Assembly (NCBI GenBank): GCA_965285935.1
Contig: OZ260666.1
Span: 3,596,001 to 3,660,000, forward strand
Length of the DNA stretch: 64,000 bases
From: Ophelia neglecta
Taxonomy: Eukaryota
Direction: 5' to 3'
The first letter of the stretch is position 1. Every line of letters begins with the position of its first letter. A model generated the notes under the pieces. It was not told where the DNA came from, made no database searches, and was given only the letters and a program-made list of their open reading frames with translations. Positions 1,335-47,990 of the stretch are shown here, in pieces. A program made the translations under genes and the position numbers.

Positions 1335-4300
1335 ATGAAGCATATGAATATCATACTAATATTATTAACCTGCCAGAATATTTATGCGCTGGCCAGACAA
1401 CCTGGAGGTAAGTAGAAAAATTATATAATTTGTAGATTGTAATGAGAATTAGACAAAAACGTGTTCCAATAAGTGAGTCATTCGGCAAAACATACTAGTA
1501 GCGTTAGGTTTAGGAAAAATATGTAATATGCCAAAGGAAAGCTTTGGCTCTCCCATTGAGATTTTAGATGAGTTTTTCCTTACAAAACCAAAAACGGTAT
1601 AAAATGTCCTAGCACTCTACAGAGGAAAGTGGGAATATATCAAGTATATTATGATGCCGATAAACATAATTTATAGCTGTATGTTAGGTGCTCACAAAAT
1701 ACTTCTGGGGAACTGGAAGTGATGAACATTGCTGCTTTCATTGCAAGATATGTCTGATTTTATAGTGTTGCATATAGGTTATTAAATATCATACTGCCAC
1801 TGACTCGTGTCGCCACATCATCTTGTGTCCGCCTTTGGCCGTAAAGACTATTTCACCCTGTATTGTTTGGTTTAGAGAATGTATTAATTTGGTCCTTTTA
1901 AAATGAAAGTAGTTGACTACCTTTTCTTATGACATTTGTCAGCCGCCTATTGATTAAAGCGGCTAATTTAAAACAAAAAATATCGGAAGATAGTGTTTCG
2001 GAGACTTGCCGTATAAATACTACCTCGAATTATTACTCAGTAAATTAGGTTAAACTTACCAGTTGATAATTGCATAAAAACTGGATTGTTAGCAAACACG
2101 TAACTTTAATGATTTTCTCACCTACTCGCTTAGAAGCACATACCAGAGTATACACTGGAAACAACGCCAGTCTGTTATGGAGGCTGCCTGAAGCAAATAT
2201 ACAACCTGTCAAATGTTACTTCAACACAGAAACTAGTATATTTACAATCAAGGATTCCAATGTAATATACAAGGGTGGCAACGTCTTCAAGGAGAGAATG
2301 AACGGCACACTGACGAACAACACTTTTGAGATAACCTTGGTGAATGTCACCATAGAAGACGCTGGGACTTATATCTGCCGTAAAACGAACTATACCGTGA
2401 CAAAGAAACTACGTGTCTCGCGTAAGATATGGTATTGTTAATGTTTCTGTAAAGCATTTTAACATCTGTTTGTCTGGGGTAAGAGATGAAATTGTTAATG
2501 TTGAATATTGCTAAATACCATTATTAAACTAGAATACTTGTTCATTGAGGTAAGATATATTACTGATAATGTATCAGTATATCAATTTAACACCTGCTCT
2601 CCAATTTTTCATTGTTTTCCGATTTTACCTACTTAATATAATAATGTTTCGTCATGTGAAAATAGCTGTCAACTTTGAACTTATTCAAAGGATGAAAACC
2701 CGAAGCCTTTTTTGGAACTCAATGTTAAATGTCAAAGTGGCCATGGAGTCTAACTTACTGAAAAATTACTATCCATCTGTCCTATTTTGAACACATAGTT
2801 TTTTTTTTTGATGTGGCTTTCACTATACACAACACTTAACTACATTTTATTGCTAGTGATATCAACTTTATATTTGCATATTTGTATTTGCACGTACTTA
2901 TTTTGTTTGGTAGCTGGGGATTGATGTATGTTGGCCTGAAGCGGCTGGTACAAGATGATTTCAGGCCTATTGAATGGACTCTTCTTGAATTGAATAGTGA
3001 TGTAGCTTTGTCTACCGCATAACCACTTCTGTTTCTTACTCTCCTCTTCCATACTACTTGATATTAAGACAGTTTCTCCGTGGTGCTTGTTTTTCGTGGT
3101 TACACACTGGAACAGGCACATGCGCTGTATTTTAATATATTTTTGTTCATATAGGACCGACCGTTCGTTTACCGGATAAGAAGTTAGCCTCGTCAACTCA
3201 GTCCCCATTGGCTTTCTTCGCAATGATTCAATTAATCATAATACCTGTTATAGGAGTCCCCCTAACATTGGGCTGCTGTCTGTGTAAGTCTCTATCTTTT
3301 TATTGATTGACGAATTTAAAAAGCCAGAATTGTAATCTTTGCCATCGGCCATAACGCTTATTCATGGATGATAAATTGAGATATTTAACCCATACTAAAC
3401 TATACTTTCACAGTGAATCTAATTCAGTCAAGGCAGAAGACTATTGATTCGTCAAAATCGTCATGCTTTGCATTATAATGACAACTTCGGATAATTCTGA
3501 AACTTTGAAATAATAATCACCTTATTTTTCTGCCCTTTAGAACTGCAATAAAAAAAAGTGAAAAGTGTATATTTAATTTATCCCTATCTCTTACATGTAT
3601 AAGTAAAGAGTATAAGCCAGACTAAGCATATTTCACACTACTTGCCACATTAAAACAAATCATACCTCTCTAGAAAGCATGATGATGCCTAAAGTTTATT
3701 TGCCCAATTTTGTTTCTTTCTAAAGTAGACTAACATTGCAACATATAAACATTTAGCAGTTTTTATTTTTGAACATTAATTCATACATTGGATGACATCT
3801 TGTGTTTGCTCGAATAATTTTTTGTGTGGAAAACAGATAAATCGAATGAATATGACGAGCAGAGCCGAACCATAAACCAAGACGTTGAAGTTGGGGACAC
3901 TCGACAGCCACTACCTGGTAACAGAATTAAACATAAATGTCAAATTAACATTAACAGTTATATGGACGAGAAGGATACATTTTATCGCTAATGCCTGATT
4001 TAATATAATTGTGGGCTACGAGATTCGTCATTGTGAAGGTGCAGTCGGAAGAGCGTTACACATATTACATACCGTTACAATAGATTACCTTTTATCACAT
4101 ACTTTCCAAATGAATGGTGTTTCCCCTAGCCAGTAATGAAAGCAGCATGATATTAAGAAAGGAAGCGATATCGGAGGGGGGGGGGGAGTTTTGCCACTTG
4201 CCATAACGCTAATTGGTGGGTGATAATTAAGCCCATGCTAAGCTATACTTTCACATTGAACTAATTCAGGTAAGATAGAAGACCACTGATAAGTCGTCAA

Positions 4301-6511
4301 GTTTGGTATTATATGGAATGTTCCGAAACTTTGAAGGATTAATCATCTTATTTTCTTGCTCTTAAACACTGCAATAAAATACGGTGAAAGTGTATATTCC
4401 CCCTTTCTTACGTGTATAAGTTAAGAATATAAGCCAGATTGATTTCATACTACTTGCCACATTTTAGAAATTCATATCTCTCTTGAAAGCCCGATGACCC
4501 CCCCCCCCCCTAACATCTATTGGCCTATTATTTTCTTTTATAGAGTAGGCAAAGTATAAAGATCTTGTTTATTTCGCTTTTGAGCAGTCTTCTACATTAA
4601 TACCATCCCTGAATGACATCTTGCGTTCCTACGAATAATTTTTGCTTATGGAAAACAGGTAATTTGAAAGGTGTTACCGAAGGAACCACTTCAAAGGATG
4701 AATCTGACGAGCGGAGCCAAACCATAAACCAATGTGTAGAAGATGGGGAAAACCGACACGCACTAACACGTATTAAAATAAAACATAAGAGTAACATTAA
4801 TATTATCTGTAATATAGAGGAGAAGGATCCTTTTTAGCAAATGAAAACTTGTTTATGCCTAATGATCTAATTTAATATACATTGGGCTACCTTAATGTAA
4901 AATACACAAATCCTTTCATATTTTGACCCTTTATAGAAGGTAGCATGGCCATGGACTGCAGAAGCGACATAATCAGTCAACACGTATATGAAGATTTGCC
5001 GAACCTATATCAACCACCCTGTCTTGTGGAAAGAGCAAACAGATCAGGTAAATTTAAAGCGGAACTTTTAATAAATGTACGCCACATTTCTAGTCCAAAT
5101 AGATAAAACTAAACGCAACTACAATGATCCCAAACTTCATGCAGAAGAAGGGCGTATGTAATAAGTAGCTTGGTTTATAAGTATACAAGATAAATAAAAG
5201 GAAGTACGCAATCCCTAATACTACATTTACAGTTCGTTATTCTCCACTCATTTAATCGCTCCTAATCTAGTATATTTTACATTTGGGATATCAAAGAAAT
5301 AGAGTGGAACAATTAAATGAAATGATTTCAGAATATTAGCCACATATTCGATCTCTTCCATTTTATCACTCATCTGATTTCATATTACAGAATATACGTT
5401 TATATTACTATATACCAAGGTATACCAATAGGCTTTAGACTGGGCCGAATCAGCGAACACATCACAGAGTCCGACGAGTTACGGATCCAGGAACCCCACC
5501 CTCGACCTGTGAATGGGGCAAGTGACAAAGGTAAACCATTCGACACGGAAGGCTAACGCAAATTAAAAATAATAGTCGTTAATGTCTAAACTTGAAACAA
5601 TTAAATAAAACCCGCCACACTGTCCATCGATGGGATGCCCAAAGAACATATGTTATAAAATATTTAAGACGTAACAAATATAGACATGCATTATATATAC
5701 TTATTTCTAAGTACAACTTAGCATCAAAACAGAAGGTAAATCTGACATGATTCCGACACTTACCAGGACAAATTAAAACCCAATGGATTATAATCGATGA
5801 CTATCCTCACTAGTCCACGGGAAACGAATATATGTTATTTTTATGCTTATTTTTATAAGCTTTTAGTATTTTACAAAGTAATAAGAAAGAAATCGGAAAA
5901 TAATAATCAATTATTTTACCCGTAGTAGAATGCAGCATGGCCATGGACTGCAGAAGCAACCCAATCAGTCAACACTTGTATGAAGAGTTGCCGGACTTGG
6001 ATATGGCTCTTATAGAAAGGGCAAGCAAAACAGGTAAACTGTTAAACATAAACATCCAGTTGGAAGGAAACAACGCCACATTTGTGAGGAGAATTCTTCT
6101 ATCGTCTTATACAAGTCTTCTCAAACCAGCGGCGGAACTATTACAAAGAACTGGTTAACAGGATTTTTTCTAGTATCTACACTATATTAACACAATTCTA
6201 GTTTCAACACTACTAAATGCGACTGTATTAGAGACACAGTAACTTTAAGTTACCAAAACTTATAAATTATTTCACACTATATGTATAATTGATTCAATAA
6301 CAAATATAGTATATAGTACTTTGTTGAAAGTTCTTTATTCGCCACTCATTTTACCGCACAAACTAGTGGGTTTCTACATTTGGGGTTTCCCAAAGATAGT
6401 TAGAAAGTAATATAAAGTAAAACAATACAACGTCAAAATAGTTACAGCATTTTCATTGTTTCTTCTCCATGTTTAACCCCTCTCAAGTTTCTTAATACAG
6501 ATAACATATAA
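1335..6511 (+). CDS. Gene A: single Ig V-like domain type-I membrane receptor with Tyr-motif cytoplasmic tail (~335 aa)
   Basis: Manual model, all introns phase-1 GT-AG: 1335-1407 signal peptide (MKHMNIILILLTCQNIYALA); 2134-2421 Ig; 3155-3283 TM (LAFFAMIQLIIIPVIGVPLTLGCCL); cytoplasmic exons 3837-3917, 4659-4769, 4937-5047 (HVYEDL), 5432-5530, 5929-6033 (HLYEEL), 6501-6511 (DNI*). The joined frame is open. Confidence 0.75.
2134..2421 (+). CDS. Gene A Ig V-like exon
   Basis: GNNASLLWRLP...VKCYF...FEITLVNVTIEDAGTYIC with V-set DxGxYxC; tag acceptor at 2131-2133, gtaaga donor at 2422. Confidence 0.85.
3339..4900 (+). repeat. Tandem duplication (~850-bp period) of intron plus cytoplasmic exon within gene A
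   Basis: ttgcca..gccataacgct starts at 3339 and 4191; both copies contain paralogous exons (DEQSRTINQ / DERSQTINQ). Confidence 0.8.
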
Positions 6512-7946
6512 ATGTTAATACGTGGATCGATCCTAATTCTCCAGTAAGCAGTTGGCCAAAATGTATATCATGTGCTATGGCTTTTTCATACCCACATTAA
6601 CATATTTGGGGGCAGTAGTATATTCACTGAACATTTATATCCATTCAAGAAAAAAGAAAGTGAAAGCTGAGATTTCAAAGAAAAGTATTACAAAGTTAAA
6701 TTTCAAGTTATACATATTTCAACACCCTTGGATTCTTTGGCATGATGTTTGGATTCGTGTCTGTAACACATAAGGTGTACCAGAGTGCCAAAAATGCAAG
6801 TGATGAAAATTGAGAAAAGACAAATTATGAATCTGGAATAATGAATAAAACCCAATCCTACTGCTGATGTACACACTCCGGTAAAAAATTGTGCAAAGTG
6901 AATTTCTTCCATCATGAACATACTCCATAGCCAAATTATTTTCTTTTCCTATAGCATTGACTTCCGAAGATGAAGTGACCACACGTTGAAAAACATGACC
7001 AGTAGAACCTGGCGTAATAAAACGGTCCGGCGCATTCCACGCTAATTTGTCGGCACAGGCATTCATTGCGATGAAATCCTGAATAGGATTCTGGTTCAAA
7101 TTGTAATTCTGATTTCCATCTCGACGACATTCACCAACAATGGAGTTGCAGCTTTGTTTCTCCAGTGCATTATTTAGTGGAAAAAGAGTTTGCATTGTAT
7201 AAAAAAGCTGTAAAATTGTCTTCTTGATAAGTGCTTAGGTATATGTAAACAATAATATTACAATTCTTAGATAGCGCCATAATTTCTCTGTTGTGTGTGC
7301 ATCTTGTATTAATTAACTCTTATATCATAGCTAGGTTATCTTTATGTCATTGGAACAACAATCAAAAACAAGTCATTCGATTTATCACTAGCAAGCAGTC
7401 GAGTTTATATTCGTATGTATATACACTGAAAAGAACCGCCTTCATGTCCTAAAGATACTTCTTTTAATTCATATTGTACGTTAGAATTAATCGATATTAA
7501 AATATTAATCGAAGCATTGTGTATAAATCATTTTTGTAGTGTACTCTTATTTGATGATTCTTTAAATTGGCACTTTGCACTATACCAGTTACATTAGCGT
7601 CTTCAAACAATGTTTGTTTATTATGAATTAATAAAAGTAAGGCACTTACTTTTGATATACTTTTGATATAGATGTTCTAAATCATTCTAACAAGGCTGCA
7701 CAGTCAGGGCAAAGTTGGCTAATGTGTTCAGGGTTAAGGGTACGGTTGATTGGTTGATTGTTTATTATAGTGACATAGTGTATACATCTATAAGCATAGA
7801 AAGTAAACCCTAAACAAACCAATTACACCCAGCCCTACTGGGCTTATTACAGGTTATAAGTCACCTGCAAATATGACATTTCATAAAAGGCAAAAAGCTA
7901 AGTTCATGGCAAGACCTAGCACAGCCTCTCAAAAGCACATCTTTAT
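6034..7946 (+). repeat. Segment duplicated at 12401-14196 (last intron, terminal coding exon and 3' region of gene A)
   Basis: Both start gtaaactgtt.aacataaacatccagtt and end agcacagcctctcaaaa...catctttat; nearly identical over ~7080-7946. Confidence 0.9.
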
Positions 7947-12267: not shown

Positions 12268-12395
12268 CAGTGAAACCTGCCTTAAATACCTCCTCTATCA
12301 TCAGACGACCTGTAAATTAAGACCTGTATGCTTTCAATGTTAAAAATCTTTCTAGACCAACCACCTTAGAAATCAGACCAGCTTTCTTCAGTCGG
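12268..12395. mobile_element. Possible truncated Tc1/pogo-type MITE end
   Basis: ta|cagtgaaacctg start with internal gacc subrepeats; the right end is replaced by the duplicated block starting at 12401. Confidence 0.35.
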
Positions 12396-17449: not shown

Positions 17450-20400
17450 ATGATGGAGACCAAGTCGATCGTACTGCTGGTTTGTCTGTGCAAGGTAGAA
17501 GGTGTTATGACTGCACCATCGAGTGGTAAGTACTGGAATTTTATACACTGACGTATGTAGAATCTTAGAATCGACTTATGATTAGTCAAGAAGTGTACAC
17601 CAAGTCTCACTCATTCATCATGACTGATCGCTTTCAAGGGTATGTCGTTTTCCGACTATTATTCACATTGGAAGGGTGTTTTCGAATTTCAGCTTCTTCC
17701 GGCACAGTCACTAAAGTCACTAATAGAACCCTACAATTTGCAACTTCCACAGGCACAGTCATTCGAGTGAATATTGGCGACAACGCCACCTTGCGGTGGA
17801 AACTGCCGAAGGAAAATAGCATAGAGCTCACAAAATGTTATGACACGAACATGATCAACACATTTAACATTGTGAACATGACGGTGGTATTCAGGAGTGT
17901 TAATATGCGCCATGAGCCTCTCAGTTCAGGGACAAACGAGATCAGCCTAACGATGACATTGACAAATGTCACGAGAGAAGACGCTGGTTCGTACAACTGT
18001 CGTCGTACTAACTATAGTGAAACCAACACTGTTTTTGTCTGGGGTAAGTTCTCCTTTTGATTTTTCTTGACACTGACAGACCATGTGTCTCCTTCTTTTG
18101 TGCTTTTTTTGGCTACGTAAAAAACAATCTGTGAAGTAGTACATATATTGTCGGACTTTGGTTCTTAACCCTGAAAGAAATAGAATGTTATTTCTTTTTT
18201 TTTACCAGGTTCCTCTTATATCTATTCGTAACTGACTTTACAATCGTTGCAGTAATGTCCATCTTACCATATATAAGTATTTGATAAACCCTTAAATTAT
18301 ATTTTGATTAAGTCTCTCTTTCCCTTTGTTTGTGCGCCACTTTTTCTTTAAGGTAAAGAATTAGACAATGTAGAAAGAAGGAAAAGATTGCATACCCTAA
18401 CTTTTTGCATTATCAATACCATAAATTTAGTTACGATTGCTTCGTCAAGTTTCAGTATTGGATATACTTTTTTAATTATTAAAAGTTGAAACATCCTCAT
18501 GATTACACTACAGAAGACCACGTGAATTAATTTTTTCACATATTCAACTACTCATGGATAATACCAACCGTATATTTAAGATTTAAATTGTCTTAGCCAT
18601 ATTTTATACCTATGCCTTTCGCTCGGTCCATATGATTACATTTTCCGATTATTTTCAGGAAGACCTTTCCCAGCCCTAATAGATTCAGAGGGCTTTAAGT
18701 TGATGTGTAACGTCACTTCCACTTCTGTGCCAGAAGGCTTTCGAACTCCGATGGCTTACACTTGGTTAAGAGATGGCGCTGTTATCGGAAATACCTCGTT
18801 CGAATCTAACTATACGATTCCGATATGGAACATTATGAACCCGTTCCATAAATACTCCTGTCTAGGGAGAGAGAATGGCTCTACACTAGTGTCAGACTCA
18901 AGTAAGTAACACATACTGATCGTGCTTAGCAGCGTGGCTACCAAAACCCATGGAAGTCACAATGCACTGTTGGGTACCGAACGATAATTAACTAAGACGA
19001 GTAATGTGGATTTTACATCAGTTTCTGCAAGCATTGCTGAAACACCATTAAAATGAAACAGTTTAAACTTGGTTTAAGTCATCAAGTAATTTCAATTGAT
19101 ATATCGATGTTATGCGTTAACGATCCGATAATGAGTATGTTTTTTTTCAGGTGGTTTTGTGCAGCTTCCTGTTACCCCAGGCCTGCTGGTGATGATCACG
19201 GGATCCTGTGTCCTAACCTTACTACTTGTCTTAGTCATACTGCTCTGCTATCGACGTGAGTGTCTTGTCATATCTTCAACCTCGCATTTTATGTTTCAGA
19301 TTCCCTGTATAACGGAAATCGTGCTTAGTAAAATAGAATGCATACTCTGGGGATCAAATTATGTATAGAAGAGACATAATCATGCTTTTCGAAACCGTAG
19401 TGTGACATTCCGTACTTAGGAGTATGGGTGCAAAGGGTGAAGCTTTTCATCCGGGAAATCCATCAGGGCTACGCAGAATTTTAGTTACTTAGACTCTTAA
19501 TCAAAGATTGGACAGACCATAATTAAAGAATCATTCCATCAGTCCGTATTCCAAAAATAAGAAGGTCATATTTAGCATTTAAACGCTTCAACGCAAAGAG
19601 GCCCTTTTACAATACACGTGTTAAAGAAATCCCCACACAGCTTGTTTAAAAACAATGAAAGTAAACATAATAAACTACCTAGTATTACAAAATGCTAAGG
19701 TTCTTACTGTATTACATATTCGTTGATGTAGTTTACTAAATGGGTCAAGCATACTATCTAAGAAAATCAATATTTTAATGCACCAGTCTGAAATTAGCCA
19801 AATTTCTCTTTCATGCTACACAGTCTGATATAAATAGATCATATAAGATTTATTTCTCAATCAGATAATCACATCTTTATTTTGGTATAGAATCAAAACT
19901 AAGACAAGGAGACCGTCACCAGGCAGACAGCTTTCATGAACGAAGGCGTCGTCAGGAGTCATGCTGCTGTCACGAACAACGCTGCCGCCACGATCCAAAC
20001 TGTTGTCACCAGTCAAGGGGGCATCACGAGTCTGGCTGTCGTCACGAGGCACCCTGCCGTCACCGGCCACACTGCTGTCAGGAGCCATCGTGTGGTCACG
20101 ATCCACGCTGCGGTCAGGAGCAATCGTGTGGTCACCATCCACGCTGCGGTCAGGAGCCATCGTGTGGTCACGATCCACGCTGCGGTCAGGAGCCATCGTG
20201 TGGTCACCATCCACGCGGTGGTCAGGAGCCATCCTGCCATCACCAGCCATCCGGCCGTCAGGTAGATATCGATGATGATTACGACACGACCATGGTAGAG
20301 AACATCATGTTTGACCCTCAAATGGACGGTGAGCCGATATCCATAATTACTTTCCTTATCATACATTTATATTCATCCCCGGCACCTTTTACTGAATTTG

Positions 20401-20870
20401 GGTATAAATATTGTTTGAATATTAAGTGTGGGTGTACTGTATGGTTCAACAGCTGCAATAAATAACTTTTACCTCAAAGCTATTTCTGAGAAGAAGAGAT
20501 AAATGAGAGAATGCGCAGTGAGACCAGCTGAGCCACTGTCAGCGCACAATTGAATTTAAACTACATGCAAAAGTAGTTTTTAACTAAAAAATAAATATAA
20601 TACTAAGGACCAATATATCCCACGATATATTTTCATGGTATAAACATTTCGATTTGACAACCTTCTCTTCTCAAATTTCTGTTACAACTTTATTTCACTC
20701 GACGTCTTTCATTACAGTTAGAATACTGTTGCAAACTTATTGTTTTCCAAACAGAGGTCAGCGAGTTTGGACAGTCTAATACATTCAGACCTATCGCGTC
20801 CGGGTATTCCGAGGTTTGGGTGCCAGTACCTCCGCTATCTGGGAATACAGCCAGGCAAGGTGAGAAATGA
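17450..20870 (+). CDS. Gene B: two-Ig type-I receptor with Cys/His-rich repeat tail and ITIM-consensus motif (~442 aa)
   Basis: Phase-1 exons: 17450-17525 signal (MMETKSIVLLVCLCKVEG); 17693-18043 V-like (alternative in-phase acceptor 17753); 18659-18901 second Ig (LMC...YTWLRDG...YSC); 19151-19255 TM; 19891-20328 Cys/His repeat; 20755-20870 terminal exon (SGYSEVWVPVPP...*). Open frame throughout. Confidence 0.82.
19891..20328 (+). CDS. Gene B cytoplasmic Cys/His-rich hexapeptide repeat exon (36-bp higher-order repeat)
   Basis: tag acceptor ends 19890, gtgagc donor at 20329, 438 nt. Phase-1 frame reads ...CCCHEQRCRHDPNCCHQ...(CGQEPSCGHDPR)-type x4...; this frame is absent from the ORF track. 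Confidence 0.8.
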
Positions 20871-28900: not shown

Positions 28901-29324
28901 GAGCCGCCCAACCGTCAGAACAATGATGAACATGTTGAGAGCATCACGGTAGAGAAGAGCGCCACGTTTCAGCCTCAATTGGAGGGTGAGTTTAAGGCCA
29001 TTATTTGACCGGCTAGTATAGTGAAGTGTTTCCGCGAGCTCTCATTATCCTGCCTGACATCCCCATTTGTCAGACTATTCCACTGACTAAATCAAGCGTC
29101 CAATATCCTTCAAACTTCTTTACTTTTGCGTTAAAACTATTCTTTCACAATAATCGAAACTTCCTAGATGAATTAATTAATGTTTCTTCATTTTCTAATT
29201 CGTGTCTTAACCACCAGAGGCCAGCGAGGGACAGCCTAGCACAGTCTTACCTACAGAAGTTCGATATTCATTTGTTTGGGTACCACGACCTCCGCCTTGT
29301 GTGCAGAAAGCGACCCAAAAATGA
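25993..29324 (+). CDS. Gene C: paralog of gene B; two Ig domains, TM, Cys/His repeat tail, ITIM-consensus motif (~431 aa)
   Basis: Phase-1 exons: 25993-26065 signal (MGSELIVLLLCLCHVAD); 26622-26921 V-like; 27372-27614 second Ig; 28135-28239 TM; 28518-28985 Cys/His repeat; 29218-29324 terminal exon (VRYSFVWVPRPPP...*). AATAAA at 29346. Exon sizes 243 and 105 are identical to gene B. Confidence 0.82.
26050..26448 (+). repeat. 22-bp minisatellite (accgcaccagctagtg|gtaagt) derived from gene C's signal-exon end and splice donor, ~18 units
   Basis: The first unit is the true exon end plus GTAAGT; later units degrade toward 26448. Confidence 0.92.
28518..28985 (+). CDS. Gene C cytoplasmic Cys/His-rich repeat exon
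   Basis: 468 nt, phase 1-1; reads ...GCRHEKRDRHEPGCQHEPI(CRQKSGCHHEPI)-type x3...CCHEEGC...; gtgagt donor. Confidence 0.8.
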
Positions 29325-33595: not shown

Positions 33596-35528
33596 ATGGA
33601 GTCCAAGCTGATCGTACTACTAGTCTGTCTGTGTAAGATAACAGATGTTATGACCGCACCACCTGGCGGTAAGTACCAGAATTCATACATTGACGTATGT
33701 AGATTTCTTAGAATAAATTTATGATTGGTCAAGTAGTATACACCAAGTCTTATTCATTCATCATAACTGGCCGCTTTTAAAGTAACCTTATTCACCCTGA
33801 AAGGAGGATTTTATGCAAAGAATGATAAACATGGTAAGCCTTTTTTCCAGCTTCTTCAGTCACAGTCACTCGAGTGAGTGTTGGTGAAAAGGCCACCTTG
33901 TGGTGGAATCTTCCTGAGACAAATAGCAGAGAGCCACTCAAATGTTTTGATAAGAACGAGATGAACACATTTAACATTGTAAACGGGAGTGTGGTATTAA
34001 GAAATAGTAATAAATACAGCGTTAAGCATCTCTACGAAAAGATAAATGAGACCGGCCTAGAGATGACCTTCAAAAATGTCACGAGAAATGACGCTGGCCT
34101 CTACAACTGTTGTCGTACTAACTATAGTGAAAGCAATACACTTTTTGTCTGGGGTAAGTTCCCTTTCCTTTTCGCTCGGCCCTGAAAGGTGTAGATAAGT
34201 TGTTATTTCTTGTTGACGAAGTGTCTCATATATGTAGTTATAACTATATTACAGTCGCTTAGGCAATGCATAGATTGTCATATTTCAGTGCAGATAAACT
34301 CTTAAAGTAGTATCTCATGTATTAAATATCTAAGCTTCATAGTTTTTTGCATTTTTTTCCACAATGGGAAAGGTATAGCAACGTGGATAGCACTAATTGT
34401 CCAACTTCGAACATATTTCATTATGTTTATAGCAATTCATTAATTTACGAATGATTCGTCGGATTTCAATATTGGATATACTTGGTTAAATGAACTACAG
34501 GTTGATCTTTCTTATACTTGCAATAAAGCAGTAAATAGGTCTAGGTAATATAGATGCGTTACCATATTTATCGTCTTCTTGAGTCTTCTTGAGTCATAGA
34601 CTCTACACTAGTGTCAGACTCAAGTAAGCAACACACACTAATAGTGCTAACCAACGTAGCTTCTAAAACCGATGGAAATTCCCACTGCATGTTTTTACAC
34701 CGAACGTCGGTGAACTAATACGCGCATGTCCAGTTAAATCGGCTATCCGTATGCATGATTGTCCCAAGCCAGAGTGAGGTCCGATCCTCAGCGCTCTGGC
34801 CCTCGCTGCACTCATCTTGTATCCTCTAGACGCCGGCTGAAATAAAATGTGGACTTAAGACGGGCCTTTCTACTACTCTCTCTCCCGTCACTTAAAGTTG
34901 TTATTTTGCAATTACTATCAACTAATATATGATTTGAATATATTTAATATAATGTTTTCAGGTGGTTTTGTACGTCTTTCTATCACTCTGGGACTACTTG
35001 TGGGAATCACGGGAATTGGTGTCATAATATCCGCAGTACTCCTTATTATACTGGTCTGCTATCTACGTACGTGTCTTTTATCTTGAAAGAGAATTCCGCG
35101 CCTTCGTGTATTTTTTACTTTCTGAGCGCATATTCCCCGATCGAACAGAACAAAATGACCTGATTTCTCATCCATTTCATAAAATCCGAGACATTTCTTC
35201 CTCTAGCAAATAATCACATCTTAAATTTGGTCTAGGATCAAAACAAAGAAATGGACCTGCGTCAACCCAAACGACTTCCATTGTTGTCACAGACGAACAC
35301 GGTCGTTCCAGACCAGGTTGTCTTCACGAGCAAAGAAACCGTAATGAGCTCAGCTGTCCTCACGAACACAGGGGTCGTCAGGAGTCTGGCTGCTGTCACG
35401 AACAACGTTGCCGTCATGAGCGCTGTTGTCACGAGTCAAGGGGCAATCACGTCCATAGATGTCGTCACGAACCACTCTGCCGTCTACAGCCAAGCCGCAA
35501 TCGGGAGCAAACGCAGGAAAAATTATAA
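33596..35528 (+). CDS. Gene D: paralog with the second Ig exon deleted, a shorter Cys/His tail and no ITIM (~257-265 aa); may be a pseudogene
   Basis: 33596-33668 signal (MESKLIVLLVCLCKITD); 33851-34153 V-like; possible in-frame 24-nt remnant 34600-34623; 34962-35066 TM; 35236-35528 tail (...GCCHEQRCRHERCCHE...QEKL*). Confidence 0.7.
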
Positions 35529-40087: not shown

Positions 40088-43000
40088 ATGACATATAATA
40101 TATCAAAGACACCGGTGATCCCCGCAGTCTTATGCTTGTTTATACTGCCACTCCCATATATCGCCGCCTCGTCAAAAAGCGAAGGTAGGTTCACTGTTAA
40201 CAATTTTCACTCGTAACATACGAATATTTGTTTCCTGATAAGCCTTTGGGGGGGGGGGGGGGGAGGGCAATAATACCTAAAACTATAATACTGGAACAAA
40301 TTCAATACAAACCAAATGTGTTGGCTTATCCTACATTGCCTATTTATCCCTTAGGGTTATTAGGCAAAAAGAAAATCACAAGTCCAACGATTTTGGCTTT
40401 CACTGTCTAACATTCCGTTTGCTAGCACAATGCGCCGGTCATCCCTGACTACAGATAACCGACAGATCCAATGGACGTTCTCTTTTTAATATAACGCTGT
40501 GCGGTGCAATTGTTTCCTTTTGATCCTCATTCTTAACATTTTCATGGTCTATTTAAATTTCCAGTATGGCTCAAGCGTCCCGGCCAAGTGTACGCTTGTG
40601 TTGGGTACACTGCTAAACTACTCTGGAACTACAACCACAGCTTGGGAGAGTTTGATTCAGTATACTTCCACAAGGTTCGCCCAGATTGGAGATTCCTGCT
40701 TGGTATGAACTGGGACGGTGAGTTTTCGGTTAACATGCCGAGGGCTAACCTGGTTGAAGGCAGCACTTATGGGCTGTCGTTGGCGGGAATAGTGATGGAA
40801 GACAGCGGAATATATGAAATAGAAGTTTACCTGCAGCGCCCTTCCAAGGTGATTCACAACCAAGCAGAACTAATCGTGCTTATCCCATCAGGTACAGCCA
40901 AAATTTAAAAATTTCGTAACGGCTTACAAACTTAACACGATCATGTTATTATTATTGTTTTATATGTATATATAAACATGCACTCTACATTTGCCTTTGT
41001 GTCTTTCAGCATGCCCCGATCGACACCGATTTCAGCAGCCAGTCATCACAATAAGAGAGGCAATAGGCGGGTCGGGCAATGTAATACACATATATAATAA
41101 CACACTGGAGGTGCCCCGGCCAGTGAATGTCAGCCTCATTGTTGCCATACCAGCAGCCGACCCGCCTGTTACATGTACTATAACCCTGGAGGGAGTCCAC
41201 ATCCATACCTGCGAAGGGGGGTCAGACAATGTGGTTGAATGCGAGAAGAAATTCGCTCTAGGTCAAGGTCAACATCAGACAATAACCCTAAACCTGACCT
41301 TCATAGCCTACGAACCCAGCATTACAACACTTCATGTGTACACCAAACCAGGTATGCGGACTTCATTGAAGATAATATTTTGTTATGACCAAGTCGAGAA
41401 CTCACCGGGTCACCCATGTTATTATTGGCAGGGCGAGTGACATGATAATCCGACGGCCATCCAATCTCCTTAATACTAGACACACCCTTGTAACATCATC
41501 TTGACTATATCAATGATTTTGCATTGACAAACTCTTGCGAATGAGTGAAACAAAGTTAAATGAGTATGCGCGTTCTTAATGACCCCTAGCTCGGCCTCTT
41601 ATAGGTTATAGTTCAGCCTTACCAATGAAGGAAGCCTATCACACAACATTATTAAGCGCAATATGAGTATGAGGAGAGGGTATAAAAACCAATCAAGATC
41701 AAAGGTTTTACCAACTATAGAGATATGTCTATGGGCAAGATAGAATTTGAGTCTAATCATGATATAGTTATGTCCATTAACGATCACAAGGTGTCAAATC
41801 AAGCCATAATTACACATTCATTTTAAATAGTCCGCTATTTGTTGGCATATGCGGCTTTAAATACAAGCCAGGCTTTTGCCCGGCATGTTTTGTAATTTTT
41901 TTCGCATCTTTTAAAATAACCTATTTTTTATAATCACATGTCAGTCGCCCCAGATGGCCCTAGATATGACCAAGCGTCAACACAACACCTGGATACGGAT
42001 TCCTCAGTATCAACACCAACCACGGTGCTCTTATGGTCTAGCACTGTGACCCAGCAAGAGAATACTACTTCAGCCAACGAGACAGCTTATTGGTTGGACA
42101 CCAGAGGGCGCAGTATGACGACAGGGGAGGTGTCAGTTATCGCGATCTGTGCCATAGCGCCCCTTTCAATTCTGGGTGTGACCGTAGTTATGTACGTTAT
42201 ATGGAATCGTCACAGAACGGAAAAAGGACATCAGTCTAAGGTAATTATGCCTCCACTAGCGCAATAGTTAAGTTTGAGTTTCACAGCTGTGGCTTTATTT
42301 GCAGTCACGCTAATAAAACATAACATGAAAATTCCAAGTCTTTTTAAATCAAAAGTCCGCTTTTATTTTTCGGTTATCAAACTGATTTTCAATCACTGGT
42401 CTAACCAAAACTAGTCAGCATCTACTTTTTCCATAAATAACATAAATACTGTGACCTAGTCCTAGGTGAGAAATGTTAACGACCTGTCCGATCGTAAACA
42501 AAGAGCAGACACAATAAGTTTATCGCTATGGGCAGTCATTTTGAAGTTGTCTTGTTTACTGTAAACCAAGAAATATTCACTAACAGGAAAACTTTCCTTA
42601 TCTGAATAATTCTAAGTAGTGACTTCCTGTGAAACAAGCTACAGAAGGAGATAGCAAAGAGGCAACTTCCACGAGCAGGAAATATTTGTTATGATCGCGA
42701 AATTTTCATGGTCGCGATATTTTTGTGATTTTAAAAACGCCCATAGCACGAAACATGGACCATGAAAGTACCATCTTAGACAGTTTATGTGATATTGGAC
42801 ATCCTTTATCCGTTTAAACTTAATGCAATTATATTTTTAGCAGGACGCCGATTATGGAGATGGGGTAAATTGTCGACATCCAGATAAAAACGCCCTATCT
42901 ATGTCTACTACTGAAACTACTGAGGAGCCTGGCAGCCCACCACAAGCCCCGCCACATCACTCGGCTCGAACAAACACGTCTGAGAGAAATCCGCCTGACG

Positions 43001-46000
43001 TCAATGTAACAAATGACAGTATACAACCAGCCCACTCGTCTTATGAAAACGAGACACCACCGACAGTCCCACTTCTCAGCAACGATACCCCTGAACAATC
43101 AAATGTAGAAATAGACAGGGAAACCCCTGACTTATTAGTGAGTAATTCATTTTTAAATATTCAACCAATAAACAGATTAATTGTAGTTGCTAGCGAACAC
43201 ATGCATTACTTCAATTAACTTCTCGTGGTAACGTGTGCATTAACAATATTGGGATGCGATGTTGGTGTAATGGTGGGACGATAAACAAAGAGCAGACACA
43301 ATAAGTTTATCGCAATGGCCAGTCTTTTTGAAGTTGTCTCGTTTACTGTAAACCAATAAATATTCACTAACAGGAAAACTTTCCTGATCAGATTTCACCA
43401 TATATCGCTTACATGCAATTTTGTGACTGAATAATTCTAAGTAGTGACTTCCTGTGAAACATAAGGTACAGAAGGAGAAAGCAATGAGGCAACTTCCACG
43501 AGCAGGTAATATTTGTTATGATCGCAAAATTTACATGGTCGCGATAATTTTGTGATTTTTCAATCACTGGTCTAACCAAAACTAGTCAGCATCTACTTTT
43601 TCCATAAATAACATAAATACTGTGACCTAGTCCTAGGTGAGAAGTGTTAACGACCTGTCCGATCGTAAACAAAGAGCAGACACAATAAGTTTATCGCTAT
43701 GGGCAGTCATTTTGAAGTTGTCTTGTTTACTGTAAACCAAGAAATATTCACTAACAGGAAAACTTTCCTTATCAGATTTCACCATATATTGCTTACATGC
43801 AATTTTGTGACTGAATAATTCTAAGTAGTGACTTCCTGTGAAACAAGCTACAGAAGGAGATAGCAAAGAGGCAACTTCCACGAGCAGGACATATTTGTTA
43901 TGATTGCAAAATTTTCATGGTCGCGATATTTTTATGATTTTAAAAACGCCCATAGCACGAAACATGGACCATGAAAGTACCATCTTAGACACTTTATGTG
44001 ATATTGGACATCCTTTATCCGTTTAAACTTAATGCAATTATATTTCAGCAGGACGCCGATTATGGAGATGGGGTAAATTGTCGACACCCAGATAAAAACG
44101 CCCTATCTATGTCTACTACTGAAACTACTGAGGAGCCTGGCAGCCCACCACAAGCCCCGCCACATCACTCGGCTCGAACAAACACGTCTGAGAGAAATCC
44201 GCCTGACGTCAACGTAACAAATGACAGAATACAGCCAGCCCACTTGTCTTATGAAAACGAGACACCACCGACAGTCCCACTTCTCAGCAACGATACCCCT
44301 GAACAATCAAATGTAGAAATAGACAGGGAAACCCCTGACTTATTAGTGAGTAATTCATTTTTAAATATTCAACCAATAAACAGATTAATTGTAGTTGCTA
44401 GCGAACACATGCATTACTTCATTTAACTTCTCGTGGTAACGTGTGCATTAACAATATTGGGATGCGATGTTGGTGTAATGGTGGGACGATAAACAAAGAG
44501 CAGACACAATAAGTTTATCGCTATGGGCAGTCATTTTGAAGTTGTCTCGTTTACTGTAAACCAAGAAATATTCATTAACAGGAAAACTTTCCTGATCAGA
44601 TTTCACCATATATCGCTTACATGCAATTTTGTGACTGAATAATTCTAAGTAGTGACTTCCTGTGAAACATAAGCTACAGAAGGAGATAGCAAAGAGGCAA
44701 CTTCCACGAGCAGGAAATATTTGTTATGATTGCAAAATTTTCATGGTCGCGATATTTTTATGATTTTAAAAACGCCCATAGCACGAAACATGGACCATGA
44801 AAGTACCATCTTAGACAGTTTATGTGATATTGGACATCCTTTATCCGTTTAAACTTAATGCAATTATATTTCAGCAGGACGCCGATGATGGACAAGGGGT
44901 AAATTGTCGACACCCAGATGAGGACGTCATATCTATGTCTACTACTGAAGAGCCTGGCAGCCCACCACGAGCCCCGCCACGTCACTCGGCTCGAACAAAC
45001 ACGTCTGAGAGAAATCCGCCTGAGGTCAACGTAACAAATGACAGTATACAACCAGCCCACTTGTCTTGTGACAACGAGACACCACCGACAGTCCCACTTC
45101 TCAGCAACGATACCCCGGAACAATCAAACGTAGAAATAGACAGGGAAACCCCTGACTTGTTAGTGAGTAATTCATTTTTAAATATTCAATCAATAAACAG
45201 ATTAATTGTAGTTGCTAGCGAACACATGCATTACTTCATTTAACTTCTCGTGGTAACGTGTGCATTAACAATATTGGGATGCGATATTGGTGTAATGGTG
45301 GGACGATGAACGAACAGCTGCATAGAATTTGGAAAAATGTCTTGGATGAAAATTAATAATTACTAAATTAAGAATAAAGAATGTATCGGCTGGACGCTGC
45401 CAGCTGACCAACACATTAAATTCAAACAAAAGACTAGTATAAAAGGCGCAGGCAACACCAGAGCTCGTGTTATGGTTATGAAAAACGAACGTAAGCGTGA
45501 AATTCCACCATTCTTTCGGTCCCTGATAAATATAACGTATTAGAATGCATCTAAAAAAAGTTAGCAAGACAAATGTGAAGCCAGCCCTTTAACAACAAAG
45601 TGAGCACCATTAAGATGCAACTACAGTAAGTGAACCAATTTGACAAATGTAGAAGATATTGAGCACCTTTCCTTTCGATATTGAGGGACACCTGTTTGGC
45701 GGGACAGTACCATAAACATCGTCAGGAGTTTATGCACTGTTGTTAAACCCTGCGTGTCTATATTAGATCAAAAGGTCATAATTATTATTGAGTCTGTCTA
45801 TTTTCTACAGGTAAAAGAATTTGCAAGACAACCAGAACATGGTATAGGCGAACAACACCCAACAGAAACGACAACTCCTTCCAATTCCAGCCTGAAAGAT
45901 TATCCGTCCCTGTTTGATTCCCTGTCAAAAGGTCATCTGACTCCACCAGATACCGTAACGGGACTGATACAGCAGAAGTCCTTGCCAGAACATTCTTCGT

Positions 46001-47313
46001 ACGGGTCAGATACAGAGGCAGGGGATCATCCGTCCAAATTAGATAACGAACTGGGAAAAGGAAGTGCGCTCCATTTAGGTTCAGAGTCAGGAAGTCACAC
46101 GTCTCAGCCATCTTGTTTGCCTCCGTCGAGTTCCGCATCAGAAGGCCGTTCGTCCCATTTGAAATCCTTGAAGGGGGGTCGAACATATCTGTCAAATTCC
46201 GTGCGAGGAGAATGTACATCTCAGCCGGCTTTAAGACAAGAAGATCGCCCGAACAAGCCAGTTTCTAGGCAAAAACGTCGTCCGGAAGATCGTCCGTTAC
46301 AGTCAGATTCAGGAAATGGAGATCATCAGTCACTGACGGGGTCAGGATCAGGGGATCGTCCATCACAGCCAGGGTCAGTAGCAGGGGACCGTGCGTCACA
46401 GCCAGGTTTGGGACCAGGGAACCGTGCATCACAAACATGTTTAGGACCAAAAGATCGTTCGTTCAATCCAAGTTCAGTGGCAGAATATCGTCAGACAAAA
46501 CCAGCTACAAGCCAACGAGTCGCGACACACCTATGGTCAGCAACAGGAGACTGTCCGTCACCAACAGGGTCAGGATTAGGCGATAATCAGTCACGGGAAG
46601 GTTTCAGACAGGGAGAGCTTGCGCCACAGCCAGGGTTAGAACAAGGAGATTGCCCGTCACAGTCAGGATCAAGCCCAGGGGATGCAACGTCACAGCCAGG
46701 TTCAGGACCAGGAGATCATGCTTCACAGCCTGGGTCAGCACAAGGAGATACTTCGTCAAAACAAGGTCCGAGATTAGGAAATCAATCCTCACAGCCAGGT
46801 TTAGGAACAGGAAATCGTTCGTCACAGCCAGAGTCAGGGTTATACGTCTGTCCTTCAGAGACAAGCGCAGGACCAGGAGAGAATCCTGTGTCAAGGTCAG
46901 GTTTAGAGCAAAAAACTAGTCCGCCACAGCAACCGTCAGGACTAGAAGATCTTCGCTCCAGGCCGTTTGCAGGACAAGAAGTCCGCCAGCCACAGCCAGT
47001 TTCAGGATCAGGCGGCCGTCCGTCTATGTCGGATTCTTATCCCGGAAAGGATCCATCCCAATCGAAATCCAAATCAGAAGAATGTCCATTTGTACGATCG
47101 GTTACTACGAAGGATGCAGCCATGGGCGGCATATTAGCACACCGCATCTCATTCATTGCCAAGAAGCCTCCAGGAGCCCCTAATCAAGATAAGGTTATTG
47201 AAATGCTACCACAAGACCCTTCTTCGACTGACACGGATATTCCCACCACTATCAATACTTCTCCAACAGCCCCAGGTAAAACAGAAGGTTTGTTAACGGT
47301 TAGTAAAGAATAA
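40088..47313 (+). CDS. Gene E: type-I receptor with Cys-less V-like domain, second beta-rich domain, Ser/Thr stalk, TM and long low-complexity tail (~1148 aa if all exons are used)
   Basis: 40088-40184 signal (PAVLCLFILPLPYIAA); 40565-40891 (GYTAKLLWNY...EDSGIYEIEV); 41010-41351; 41945-42240 stalk+TM (VSVIAICAIAPLSILGVTVVMYVIW); phase-0 exons 42841-43137, 44049-44345, 44875-45162; 45811-47313 G/S/P/Q-rich. Phases are compatible. Confidence 0.72.
42390..45306 (+). repeat. Recent tandem array of ~0.8-1.2 kb units, each carrying a ~297-nt coding exon
   Basis: Near-identical introns and exons; exon starts are 1208 and 826 bp apart. Confidence 0.93.
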
Positions 47314-47368
47314 GTAAGCTTTAGGGAACAAGACCCTTTGATCACGGACACGACCACACAACGCCCAG

Positions 47369-47990
47369 ATGAGCATTAACCCGGGAGATGAACTGAAAGT
47401 ATTCAACCATGAAGTCTTGTCCCTAGCTCACCTTGCCTGCATACATGGCGAAATCCCAGCCATTGGAAAAAAAACTGTAGGAATACAGGTACCGACGTTA
47501 ACGCTATGGAAACGCTTGGTTACACCCCGCTGGATTTGGCAGCAACCCACGGACATTCAAACGTAGTGGAATATCTTATGAAAATAGGAGCTAATGTGGA
47601 TCTCTCCTCGACAGACGCATTTACTCCATTACACTTGGCGTCGAGTGAAGGTCACCTAGAGGTCGTTGATGTGCTTTGTCTGGCGGGAGCAAATCTTTAT
47701 ACAGAAAGTCAAAGATTTACTCCCATCGGAATTGCCTCGGCGAAGGGACACCTACAGGCTTAATCAAAAAAGGAGCTGATTTGATTCGTGCTGGTATTGG
47801 GGGTAATACCCCTTTACAGCTTGTTACCAAGGAAGGTCTTGGAGAGGTTGTTTGCCTTTTACACAATTCGGGTGCCGATATGATTAAACTCAACCAGAAC
47901 AAAAGCTCAGCTTTGGACATCACTTTAGAAAGGAGTCATAATGACATTTTTGAATTTCTCTCTGCCAAGGGGGCTGTTGCAAATGTTTAG
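47369..47990 (+). pseudogene. Six ankyrin repeats broken by frameshifts, directly downstream of gene E's stop
   Basis: LAHLACIHGE / TPLDLAATHGHSNVVEYLMKIGANVD / TPLHLASSEGHLEVVDVLCLAGAN / TPIGIASAKGH / TPLQLVTKEG / SALDITLERSHNDIFEFL, spread over three ORF segments; shifts near 47470 (A-run) and 47760. Confidence 0.85.

What the first reader, a model, noticed from the sequence alone, without database searches (positions are those of the whole stretch)
1335..47990. Tandem cluster of non-canonical Ig receptors with swappable cytoplasmic signalling modules
Seen: five same-strand signal-Ig-TM genes and two relics within 60 kb, with symmetric-phase exons and four tail types: YEDL/YEEL exons (A), Cys/His repeat + ITIM consensus (B, C), Cys/His repeat without ITIM (D), and low-complexity + ankyrin (E). 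Established: birth-and-death IgSF clusters with inhibitory and non-inhibitory members are typical of immune/allorecognition loci (vertebrate LRC and CD300, Hydractinia Alr complex). Inference: a lineage-specific invertebrate immune or self-recognition receptor complex, possibly undescribed.
Basis: partly seen in the sequence, partly recalled or inferred. Interest (0 to 1): 0.85.

Follow-up and report, generated by a model that had tools for sequence, protein, structure and literature searches.

The report
Giant orphan Ig-receptor gene array
This stretch is one repeat unit of a megabase-scale array of two undescribed families of antibody-fold surface-receptor genes in a marine invertebrate. The genes exchange outer domains and carry different signalling tails, much as vertebrate immune-receptor clusters do, but no expression or functional data could be obtained.

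Summary
The + strand carries five signal-peptide/Ig/TM gene models plus relics, and the exon borders and symmetric phases are as described.

- **State of the five genes.** B and C are intact. A is probably intact. D has lost its second Ig exon and its tail is frameshifted. E's ankyrin end carries three frameshifting indels and a premature stop relative to an intact paralogue.
- **Scale.** The window is one copy of a block (A, B, C, D, E, relic) repeated about 6-8 times between 3.07 and 4.1 Mb of contig C9. It belongs to two co-amplified families with at least 150 and at least 132 N-terminal-domain exons, spread over C9 3-20 Mb.
- **Folds.** Both N-terminal domains fold as V-set Ig (Z 12.5-12.8). 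Family 1 has Trp where the B-strand Cys normally sits and Cys where the C-strand Trp normally sits. Family 2 has no disulfide.
- **Mosaic paralogues.** The Ig1 phylogeny conflicts with that of the rest of the gene, and one breakpoint lies inside the exon.
- **Constraint.** The terminal exon (YSxV plus PxPP) is the most constrained (dN/dS 0.13-0.24).
- **Novelty of the family.** Searches of 1.84 and 5.8 billion proteins found only three single-exon fragments from one other sequencing run.

An immune or self-recognition role is plausible but untested, because the fold neighbours include neuronal adhesion molecules. RNA data could not be reached. Other windows of this scan noted the same families elsewhere on this chromosome.

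The parts
1335..6033 (+). Gene A (family 1, one Ig domain). Exons: signal peptide 1335-1407, V-set Ig1 2134-2421, TM 3155-3283, cassette exons X1 3837-3917, X2 4659-4769, Y1 4937-5047 (YEDLP) and Y2 5926-6033 (YEELP). The terminal exon was not identified.
   Evidence: Splice sites and phases. Pfam V-set 28.7 bits against a cut-off of 26. Six other A-type copies have Ig1 95-100% identical; four keep the YE[D/E]LP exon and two show no tail exons within the stretch fetched.
17450..20870 (+). Gene B (family 1, intact). Exons: signal peptide 17450-17525, V-set Ig1 17693 (or 17753)-18043, Ig2 18659-18901, TM 19151-19255, Cys/His hexad exon 19891-20328, last exon 20755-20870 (SGYSEV, WVPVPP, stop).
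   Evidence: Pfam ig 25.4 bits against a cut-off of 21.8. AF2 model pLDDT 82, VIA Z 12.8 to Necl-4 Ig1. A 99.8% identical 6-kb copy lies at C9:3177800.
25993..29324 (+). Gene C (family 1, intact). Exons: signal peptide 25993-26065, Ig1 26622-26921, Ig2 27372-27614, TM 28135-28239, Cys/His exon 28518-28985, last exon 29218-29324 (VRYSFV, WVPRPP, stop). Intron 1 holds a 22-nt x 18 minisatellite (26050-26449) whose unit contains the exon-1 donor.
33596..35528 (+). Gene D (family 1, decaying). Exons: signal peptide 33596-33668, Ig1 33851-34153, Ig2 remnant about 34470-34625, TM 34962-35066, Cys/His exon 35236-35528 ending at an early stop. No last exon was found.
   Evidence: Comparison with the intact D-type paralogue L061 (C9:3164500-3169500, minus strand).
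40088..47990 (+). Gene E (family 2). Exons: signal peptide 40088-40184, disulfide-less V-set D1 40565-40891, D2 41010-41351 (fold not tested), TM 41945-42240, three tandem phase 0-0 exons 42841-43137, 44049-44345 and 44875-45162, low-complexity exon 45811-47313 (stop). Broken ankyrin repeats lie at 47342-47990.
   Evidence: AF2 pLDDT 88.6, VIA Z 12.5 to CD2 D1. Pfam Ank_2 on the fragments. Indels relative to the intact paralogue L064:2980-5394(-). That paralogue has ankyrin repeats, 139 bits.
59520..60416 (+). Relic of a C-like family 1 gene: the 3' third of Ig1, the intron and a degraded Ig2.
   Evidence: 77% identical to 26824-27808 including the intron. tblastn hits are. Equivalent relics recur in the other copies of the block.

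Best explanation
The window is one copy of a block of roughly 65 kb or more (its full extent was not measured) that has been segmentally duplicated. The block lies inside a supercluster on contig C9 built from two lineage-specific families of single-pass IgSF surface receptors.

**Family 1 (genes A-D).** The architecture is signal peptide, a V-set domain with a permuted 'pin' (Trp in strand B, Cys in strand C, Cys in strand F), an optional second Ig domain, a TM helix and a modular tail. Every module is a phase 1-1 exon, so modules can be lost, duplicated or exchanged without breaking the reading frame.

**Shown.**
- The gene anatomy.
- The V-set fold of both N-terminal domains.
- The copy number (lower bounds).
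- Recombination between paralogues that re-sorts Ig1 against the stalk, TM and tail.
- Relaxed constraint on the ectodomain, and strong constraint on the last exon.

**Inferred.**
- The proteins sit on the cell surface.
- The V domain binds a ligand; its BC loop and C''-D edge vary, while its C', F and G strands are conserved.
- The conserved tail tyrosines are phosphorylated and recruit SH2 proteins. These are YSxV followed by PxPP in B and C, and YE[D/E]L in A, the latter close to the Src-type SH2 optimum.
- Different family members would therefore give different, possibly opposing, signals.
- The 14-15 Cys-x5 hexads rich in His probably bind metal or are palmitoylated and act as a docking platform next to the membrane.

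The most likely role is rapidly evolving recognition of non-self or self (immune-type), not housekeeping adhesion.
For: - Exon borders and phases.
- 8 of 8 B-type and 10 of 10 C-type paralogues keep open exons apart from one stop in L017. Every splice site that could be scored is canonical, except the inner Ig1 acceptor of L016 and the Ig2 sites of five C-type copies; the C-type Cys/His donors could not be scored.
- At least 150 family 1 and at least 132 family 2 domain exons, almost all on C9 3-20 Mb.
- V-set folds: family 1 AF2 pLDDT 82, Z 12.8, rmsd 1.8 over 87 residues; family 2 AF2 pLDDT 88.6, Z 12.5, rmsd 2.4 over 95 residues.
- Permuted pin: invariant W15, C28 and C82 across 30 sequences. 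W15 aligns with the canonical B-strand Cys and C28 with the canonical Trp.
- Mosaicism: B's Ig1 is 84-91% identical to the Ig1 of eight genes whose Ig2, TM and tail are C-type. It is only 71-82% identical to the Ig1 of six genes whose Ig2, TM and tail are 82-100% B-like. B against L013 jumps from 84-90% to 98-100% at about window position 17930, inside the Ig1 exon.
- dN/dS (B-type / C-type): Ig1 0.52 / 0.79, Ig2 1.01 / 0.56, Cys/His exon 0.52 / 0.59, last exon 0.13 / 0.24.
- The Cys/His frame has the lowest pN/pS of the three frames: 0.55 against 0.81 and 1.49.
- The YE[D/E]LP exon is kept in four of the six other A-type copies.
- Exons with the same AG and GT phase-1 borders occur in another organism's reads (L001).
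Against:
- ITIM is a six-residue consensus, expected by chance at roughly 7% of tyrosines. The intact D-type paralogue reads SGYSES, which does not fit it.
- No TM segment carries the charged residue that marks vertebrate activating partners. The two YE[D/E]L motifs in A do not make an ITAM.
- The best fold matches include Necl, IgLON and Dpr/DIP adhesion domains.
- dN/dS never clearly exceeds 1.
- Copies 99.8% identical over 6 kb could partly be assembly artefacts.
- The Cys/His stretch is an 18/36-nt minisatellite open in all three frames.
Confidence: 0.5

Rival explanations
1. The two families are a cell-adhesion or wiring code, analogous to Dpr/DIP, IgLON, nectin/Necl or clustered protocadherins. 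They would give neurons or epithelia surface identities, not sense non-self.
For: - The top structural matches of family 1 Ig1 are Necl-4, neurotrimin, RIG-5, SynCAM, Dpr and DIP domains (Z 10.9-12.8). Family 2 D1 matches nectins as well as CD2 and TIGIT.
- Two co-amplified families could be binding partners, as Dpr and DIP are.
- The conserved C', F and G strands form the face those adhesion molecules use.
Against: - Wiring families are usually conserved between species. This one has no detectable relatives in 1.84 billion proteins beyond three fragments.
- The array holds many pseudogenes, truncated members and very young duplicates.
- Tails built around tyrosine motifs, and one relative reported by this scan with a cGAS-like tail (note s1-735110), look more like signalling receptors.
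Confidence: 0.2
2. Most of what is seen is young, largely non-functional segmental duplication, or partly an assembly artefact, around a few working genes. On this reading the tail 'types' are stages of decay and not a functional repertoire.
For: - D and E are damaged.
- Five C-type copies have a dead Ig2 acceptor. L019 keeps only Ig1.
- E and its four closest copies share the same broken ankyrin frame.
- Blocks are up to 99.8% identical including introns.
- Ectodomain dN/dS is 0.5-1.0.
Against: - 15 of 17 B/C-like loci examined keep open Ig1, TM, Cys/His and last exons. Every splice site that could be scored at these exons is canonical apart from L016's inner Ig1 acceptor.
- The last exon has dN/dS 0.13-0.24.
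- Divergent members at 30-60% identity still have open exons.
- Loss of Ig2 keeps the reading frame.
Confidence: 0.15
3. The family serves another fast-evolving recognition task, such as gamete recognition or the sorting of symbionts or larval settlement cues.
For: Rapid turnover, variable V-domain loops and lineage restriction fit any arms-race or species-specific recognition system.
Against: Nothing in the sequence points specifically to gametes or symbionts. Tyrosine-motif signalling tails are unusual for gamete-recognition proteins.
Confidence: 0.1

Closest known systems
Hydractinia Alr family in the allorecognition complex (Huene et al. 2022, PMC9546547)
   Same: - Tandem cluster of dozens of type I IgSF genes with pseudogenes.
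- N-terminal V-set domain that standard profiles barely detect.
- The canonical B-strand Cys is replaced by a bulky aromatic residue.
- Tails carry tyrosine motifs including [ILVS]xYxx[ILV].
   Different: - No sequence homology was detected.
- Here the F-strand Cys is kept and a new C-strand Cys appears.
- There is no Fn3-like domain.
- The Cys/His hexad exon and the WVPxPP end are not described for Alr.
- Copy number is several times larger, and a second family with ankyrin tails is interleaved.
- An allorecognition function is shown for Alr1 and Alr2 and not here.
Vertebrate paired immune-receptor clusters (LRC: KIR, LILR, chicken CHIR; CD300; teleost NITR and NILT)
   Same: - Birth-and-death tandem arrays.
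- One or two Ig domains, a TM helix and a short tail, each domain on its own phase-1 exon.
- ITIM-consensus tyrosine in some members.
- Recombination that re-sorts ectodomains and tails.
   Different: - No orthology.
- No charged TM residue and no ITAM-adaptor logic.
- The ITIM-like site is single and fused to a proline motif.
- The tail contains a Cys/His repeat.
- SHP or SHIP recruitment is untested.
Nectin/Necl, CRTAM/TIGIT, CD2/CD58, CEACAM, Dpr/DIP and IgLON N-terminal V/I domains
   Same: - These are the best structural matches (Z 11-12.8).
- Family 2 D1, like the CD2 and CEACAM N-domains, lacks the intradomain disulfide (own knowledge for CD2 and CEACAM).
   Different: - Sequence identity is only 10-23%.
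- Those families are conserved across phyla or classes, are not arrayed in hundreds, and have other tails.
Ig-TM-ankyrin receptor models noted elsewhere in this genome by this scan (s1-730835, s1-730847, s1-735110)
   Same: Gene E belongs to this family. Its intact paralogues carry D1, D2, TM, a low-complexity stretch and about five ankyrin repeats in one 744-867-aa exon.
   Different: In this window the ankyrin part is broken and the membrane-proximal cytoplasmic exon is triplicated. I found no published description of this architecture.

Membership tests
IgSF V-set domain | Two-sheet beta sandwich with C' and C'' strands, structurally superposable on solved V domains | tested here: met
   - Family 1 Ig1: nine strands, pLDDT 82, Foldseek E 5e-6 to CD4 D1, VIA Z 12.8 with rmsd 1.8 over 87 residues to Necl-4 Ig1.
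- Family 2 D1: pLDDT 88.6, Z 12.5 with rmsd 2.4 over 95 residues to CD2 D1.
IgSF V-set domain | Pfam V-set or ig profile above the gathering score | tested here: inconclusive
   - A: V-set 28.7 bits against a cut-off of 26.
- B and C: ig 25.4 and 24.9 bits against 21.8, but V-set only 20.9 and 19.8 against 26.
- D: below all cut-offs.
- E D1: no hit at all.
IgSF V-set domain | Canonical pin: Cys23 (strand B), Trp41 (strand C), Cys104 (strand F) | tested here: not met
   - Family 1: Trp at the Cys23 position, Cys at the Trp41 position, Cys104 kept. All three are invariant or nearly so in 30 sequences.
- Family 2: one N-terminal Cys only, and the F-strand Cys is replaced by Ile or Leu.
- The DxGxY tyrosine corner is kept in both families.
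Second Ig domain (C2/I-like) in B and C | Profile or fold match to an Ig domain | tested here: inconclusive
   Pfam Ig_3 E 0.04. A profile search against PDB sequences gave only E 0.4-1 hits to Ig constant-type domains. A Cys...Trp...Cys pattern is present.
ITIM-bearing inhibitory receptor | [ILVS]xYxx[ILV] in the cytoplasmic tail, conserved among members | tested here: met
   SGYSEV in all 8 B-type genes and VRYSFV in all 10 C-type genes. Last-exon dN/dS is 0.13-0.24. The intact D-type paralogue has SGYSES, which does not fit.
ITIM-bearing inhibitory receptor | Phosphorylation-dependent recruitment of SHP-1, SHP-2 or SHIP | not testable with these tools
   Needs phosphopeptide pull-down or a cell assay.
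Paired activating receptor (vertebrate type) | Basic residue in the TM helix, or an ITAM (YxxL/I, 6-12 residues, YxxL/I) in the tail | tested here: not met
   The TM cores of A, B, C, D and E have no charged residue. A's two YE[D/E]L motifs lie on separate exons about 34 residues apart, and the nearby YQPP is not YxxL/I.
Ankyrin-repeat domain (gene E) | Pfam Ank profiles in one open reading frame | tested here: not met
   The profiles match the fragments (E 1.3e-19), but the frame is broken three times and preceded by a stop. The criterion is met in paralogue L064 (139 bits, 804-aa exon).
Hydractinia Alr family | Detectable homology to Alr proteins | tested here: not met
   The profile search of 1.84 billion representatives gave only generic Ig hits and three orphan fragments. 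Alr proteins were not compared directly, so the resemblance is one of design only.

The most novel reading that the evidence does not exclude
The two interleaved, co-duplicated V-set families are linked binding partners of a self/non-self recognition supergene, the logic of an S-locus or of FuHC/Alr systems. Family 1 would signal through tyrosine and Cys/His tails. Family 2 would signal through ankyrin tails, which in one relative are joined to a cGAS-like domain. Block duplication together with exon-level recombination would generate new specificities.
Probability: 0.1. Interest if true: 0.9.

Novelty: new variant of a known kind. Interest (0 to 1): 0.66.

Why it matters
Large, fast-turning clusters of Ig-domain receptors with inhibitory-type tails are well known in vertebrates and have been found in one cnidarian. 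I found none described for annelids or molluscs, the groups that earlier notes of this scan guess for this genome.

If these genes are expressed, they give a third, independent example. It has several hundred members and a V domain with a rearranged core. It also has a cytoplasmic Cys/His repeat of unknown chemistry and a sister family that couples an Ig ectodomain to ankyrin repeats.

That would make two open questions directly testable. One is whether ITIM-like signalling logic is ancestral or convergent. The other is how invertebrates diversify germline recognition receptors.

Tried and rejected
- **RNA evidence.** Every splice junction rests on sequence and on conservation among paralogues only.
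- It was redone with coordinates only.
- **Joined models.** All searches and folds were done exon by exon, so no full-length protein was searched or folded.
- **Ig1 homology searches.** The profile search was swamped by generic multi-Ig proteins. The second search returned only the three fragments already in the query alignment.
- **Cys/His exon.** There is no Pfam family. Its hits on C7 and at C9:0.13 Mb are 18-nt satellites, that is, low-complexity matches and not relatives.
- **Other domains.** Gene E's D2 has no Pfam hit and no usable Atlas hit. Ig2 gave nothing significant against PDB sequences.
- **Binding test.** Complex prediction of B Ig1 with E D1 gave no verdict (ipSAE 0.01). This is no evidence either way.
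- **Extent of the duplicated block.** The own-genome DNA search with window 1-20000 scored only four candidates and did not delimit the block.
- **Literature.** Searches for Ig-TM-ankyrin receptors, Cys/His hexapeptide tails and IgSF arrays in lophotrochozoans found nothing specific.
- **Organism.** It was not identified. Earlier notes of this scan guess annelid or mollusc.
- **ITAM reading for gene A.** Rejected because of the motif spacing.
The proposed splice from 47275 to 47489 into the ankyrin exon was rejected. The intact paralogue has one continuous exon there.

Full report
**What is in the window**

The sequence is AT-rich (GC 0.30-0.49 in 2-kb windows) eukaryotic DNA with introns, LINE fragments and minisatellites. 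On the + strand I rebuilt five gene models exon by exon, using open frames, AG/GT sites and comparison of paralogues.

- **Genes A-D.** All four start with a short signal-peptide exon that ends one base into a Gly codon at a GGTAAGT donor. Every following exon (Ig1, Ig2, TM, Cys/His, last) begins and ends in phase 1 and has a length divisible by three.
- **Gene E.** It uses phase 1-1 for its two ectodomain exons, phase 1 to 0 for the TM exon, and phase 0-0 for three tandemly duplicated cytoplasmic exons.

All searches and folds were made on single exons by reference.

**State of the five genes**

- **B (17450-20870) and C (25993-29324)** are complete.
- **A (1335-6033)** has signal peptide, Ig1, TM and four small cassette exons. 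Two of these are duplicates carrying YEDLP and YEELP. Its last exon was not found. Six other A-type copies in the genome have Ig1 95-100% identical. Four of them keep the YE[D/E]LP exon, and the other two show no tail exons within the stretch fetched.
- **D** has only a remnant of Ig2, has lost several cysteines, and stops early. The intact D-type paralogue (L061) continues through more hexads to the same donor as B and has a last exon. D is a decaying copy and not a designed 'tail without ITIM'.
- **E** keeps signal peptide, D1, D2 and TM. Its 3' end, aligned to the single 804-aa exon of the intact paralogue L064, shows a stop inside a 24-nt insert at 47299, an 11-nt deletion at 47353, a 2-nt insertion at 47465 and a 10-nt deletion at 47758. 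E either ends after the low-complexity exon or is a pseudogene. Four near-identical copies share the same 116-aa ankyrin frame.
- **Relic.** A relic of a C-like gene lies at 59520-60416.

**The window is a small piece of something much larger**

- The Ig1 exon of B finds at least 150 open exons in this assembly (330 candidates). Nearly all are on contig C9 between 3.0 and 20 Mb.
- D1 of gene E finds at least 132 exons in the same intervals. Both counts are lower bounds.
- Between 3.07 and 4.1 Mb the order D-type(-), A, B, C, D, E-type, relic recurs about six to eight times. One copy of B, 435 kb away, is 99.8% identical over 6 kb.
- Other windows of this scan noted the same families independently. 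One note lies 399 kb upstream (s1-741936), and notes on Ig-TM-ankyrin genes lie 1.2-11 Mb downstream.

**What the domains are**

- **Family 1 Ig1.** It scores at or just above the Pfam ig/V-set cut-offs, mainly through the DAGxYxC strand.
- **Fold of Ig1.** With an alignment of 30 paralogues, AlphaFold gives a nine-strand sandwich (pLDDT 82). It superposes on V-type N-terminal domains: Foldseek E 5e-6 to CD4 D1 and VIA Z 12.8 to Necl-4 Ig1. IgLON, Dpr/DIP, CRTAM and CD96 follow closely.
- **Permuted pin.** The invariant residues are W15, C28 and C82. Aligned to a canonical fish V domain, W15 falls on the B-strand cysteine and C28 on the C-strand tryptophan. In the model, C28 and C82 lie on the neighbouring C and F strands. 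A within-sheet disulfide is an inference that I could not measure.
- **Family 2 D1.** It has no Pfam hit but folds confidently (pLDDT 88.6) as a V domain closest to CD2, nectin-1, TIGIT and CEACAM N-domains (Z 11.5-12.5). It has no cysteine pair.
- **Untested domains.** Ig2 of B and C has the Cys...Trp...Cys pattern but only borderline profile support. E's D2 remains unassigned.

**The tails**

- **Cys/His exon.** In B it has 18 Cys and 18 His in 145 residues, with a Cys every sixth residue for 14-15 hexads. At the DNA level it is an 18/36-nt repeat that is open in all three frames.
- **Reading frame of that exon.** The Cys/His frame is the one fixed by the phase-1 borders on both sides. It is the frame that leads into the conserved last exon in B, C and the intact D-type gene. 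It also has the lowest pN/pS of the three frames (0.55 against 0.81 and 1.49).
- **No known relative.** No Pfam family matches, and no paper was found.
- **Last exon.** It reads ...SGYSEVWVPVPP... in all eight B-type genes and ...VRYSFVWVPRPP... in all ten C-type genes examined. It is the most constrained part of the gene, with dN/dS 0.13 and 0.24.
- **Ectodomain and Cys/His exons.** Their dN/dS is 0.5-1.0.
- **ITIM reading.** Both versions fit the ITIM consensus, but the conserved unit is longer (YSxV plus PxPP). The D-type version, SGYSES, does not fit. 'ITIM-like' is therefore the most that can be said.
- **No vertebrate-type activating partner.** No TM segment has a charged residue, and A's two YE[D/E]L motifs do not form an ITAM.

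**How the family evolves**

- **Discordant Ig1.** B's Ig1 is 84-91% identical to the Ig1 of eight genes whose Ig2, TM, Cys/His and last exons are clearly C-type (44-66% identical to B). It is only 71-82% identical to the Ig1 of six genes whose remaining exons are 82-100% B-like.
- **C-type genes at the DNA level.** For these genes only the Ig1 exon aligns well to B, at 92-93%.
- **B-type genes at the DNA level.** For L012-L014 the identity to B rises from 84-90% to 98-100% at about window position 17930. That point is inside the Ig1 exon, and the high identity then continues through the introns for 3.5 kb.
- **Interpretation.** This is recombination or gene conversion that re-sorts the recognition domain against the rest of the receptor.
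- **Ig2 loss.** Five C-type genes have a dead Ig2 acceptor and a partial Ig2. Because the exon is phase-symmetric, skipping it keeps the reading frame, as in A and D.
- **Where Ig1 varies.** Among 22 unique close Ig1 sequences, variability is highest in the BC loop and the C''-D region. It is lowest in strands C', F and G.

**Is it known?**

- A profile of Ig1 searched against 1.84 billion representative proteins returned generic multi-Ig proteins plus three single-exon fragments of 113-147 aa.
- Two of the three fragments were traced to 1-kb contigs of one public run, ERR14113986. One of these contigs shows the same phase-1 acceptor and donor.
- A second search of 5.8 billion clusters added nothing.
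- Full-text searches found no description of such an array, of an Ig-TM-ankyrin receptor, or of a Cys/His hexad tail.
- A 2025 review of invertebrate IgSF proteins names Annelida only in a list of phyla.
- The closest described system in design is the Hydractinia Alr complex. There too the B-strand cysteine is replaced by an aromatic residue and some tails carry ITIMs. No homology was detected, and the other core residues differ.

**Interpretation and limits**

It is well supported that this is a real, very large, rapidly turning-over family of single-pass V-set receptors with constrained tyrosine-motif tails. That it serves immune or self/non-self recognition is the best guess. The guess rests on lineage restriction, birth-and-death evolution with pseudogenes, domain re-sorting, and tails built for SH2-type signalling.

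Set against that guess:
- The fold neighbours fit an adhesion or wiring code equally well.
- There is no expression evidence.
- There is no evidence of positive selection beyond relaxed constraint.
- A test of binding between B Ig1 and E D1 gave no verdict.
- Near-identical blocks need confirmation by read depth.
- The organism was not identified here.

Noticed in passing
window 26050-26449: A 22-nt x 18 minisatellite whose unit contains the last codons of gene C's exon 1 and its GGTAAGT donor. Intron 1 therefore begins with about 18 tandem copies of the splice donor, 22 nt apart (not a multiple of 3).
   Followed up: partly
window 24159-24581 and 32498-32906: Two further minisatellites (23 nt x 18 and 22 nt x 19) in the intergenic DNA before genes C and D.
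   Followed up: no
window 51415-55499: A LINE on the + strand. It has an ORF1-like open frame (51415-52808) and an endonuclease/reverse-transcriptase frame (52902-55499), 780 aa of it open. LINE 3' fragments also lie at 10237-11148.
   Followed up: no
window 35506-39149 and 57761-64000: A segment downstream of gene D is duplicated at 88-93% identity near the window end. The second copy is interrupted by the Ig1/Ig2 relic. Separately, 6030-7946 is duplicated at 12397-14196 (85-89%).
   Followed up: partly
L060 (G000:C7:88404500-88408500): An 18-nt satellite, open in all six frames, that reads as NPLC-type hexads in one frame. It matched the Cys/His exon only as low complexity.
   Followed up: yes
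L061 (G000:C9:3164500-3169500, minus strand): An intact D-type family 1 gene with both Ig exons, a full Cys/His exon and a last exon reading SGYSES...PVPP. It shows what window gene D has lost. The same type lies just upstream of the window at C9:3593655 (minus strand).
   Followed up: partly
G000:C9 22-23.6 Mb: Very long open frames (1,200-3,300 aa) made of ankyrin repeats appeared in the search with E's ankyrin fragment. Whether they relate to family 2 is unknown.
   Followed up: no
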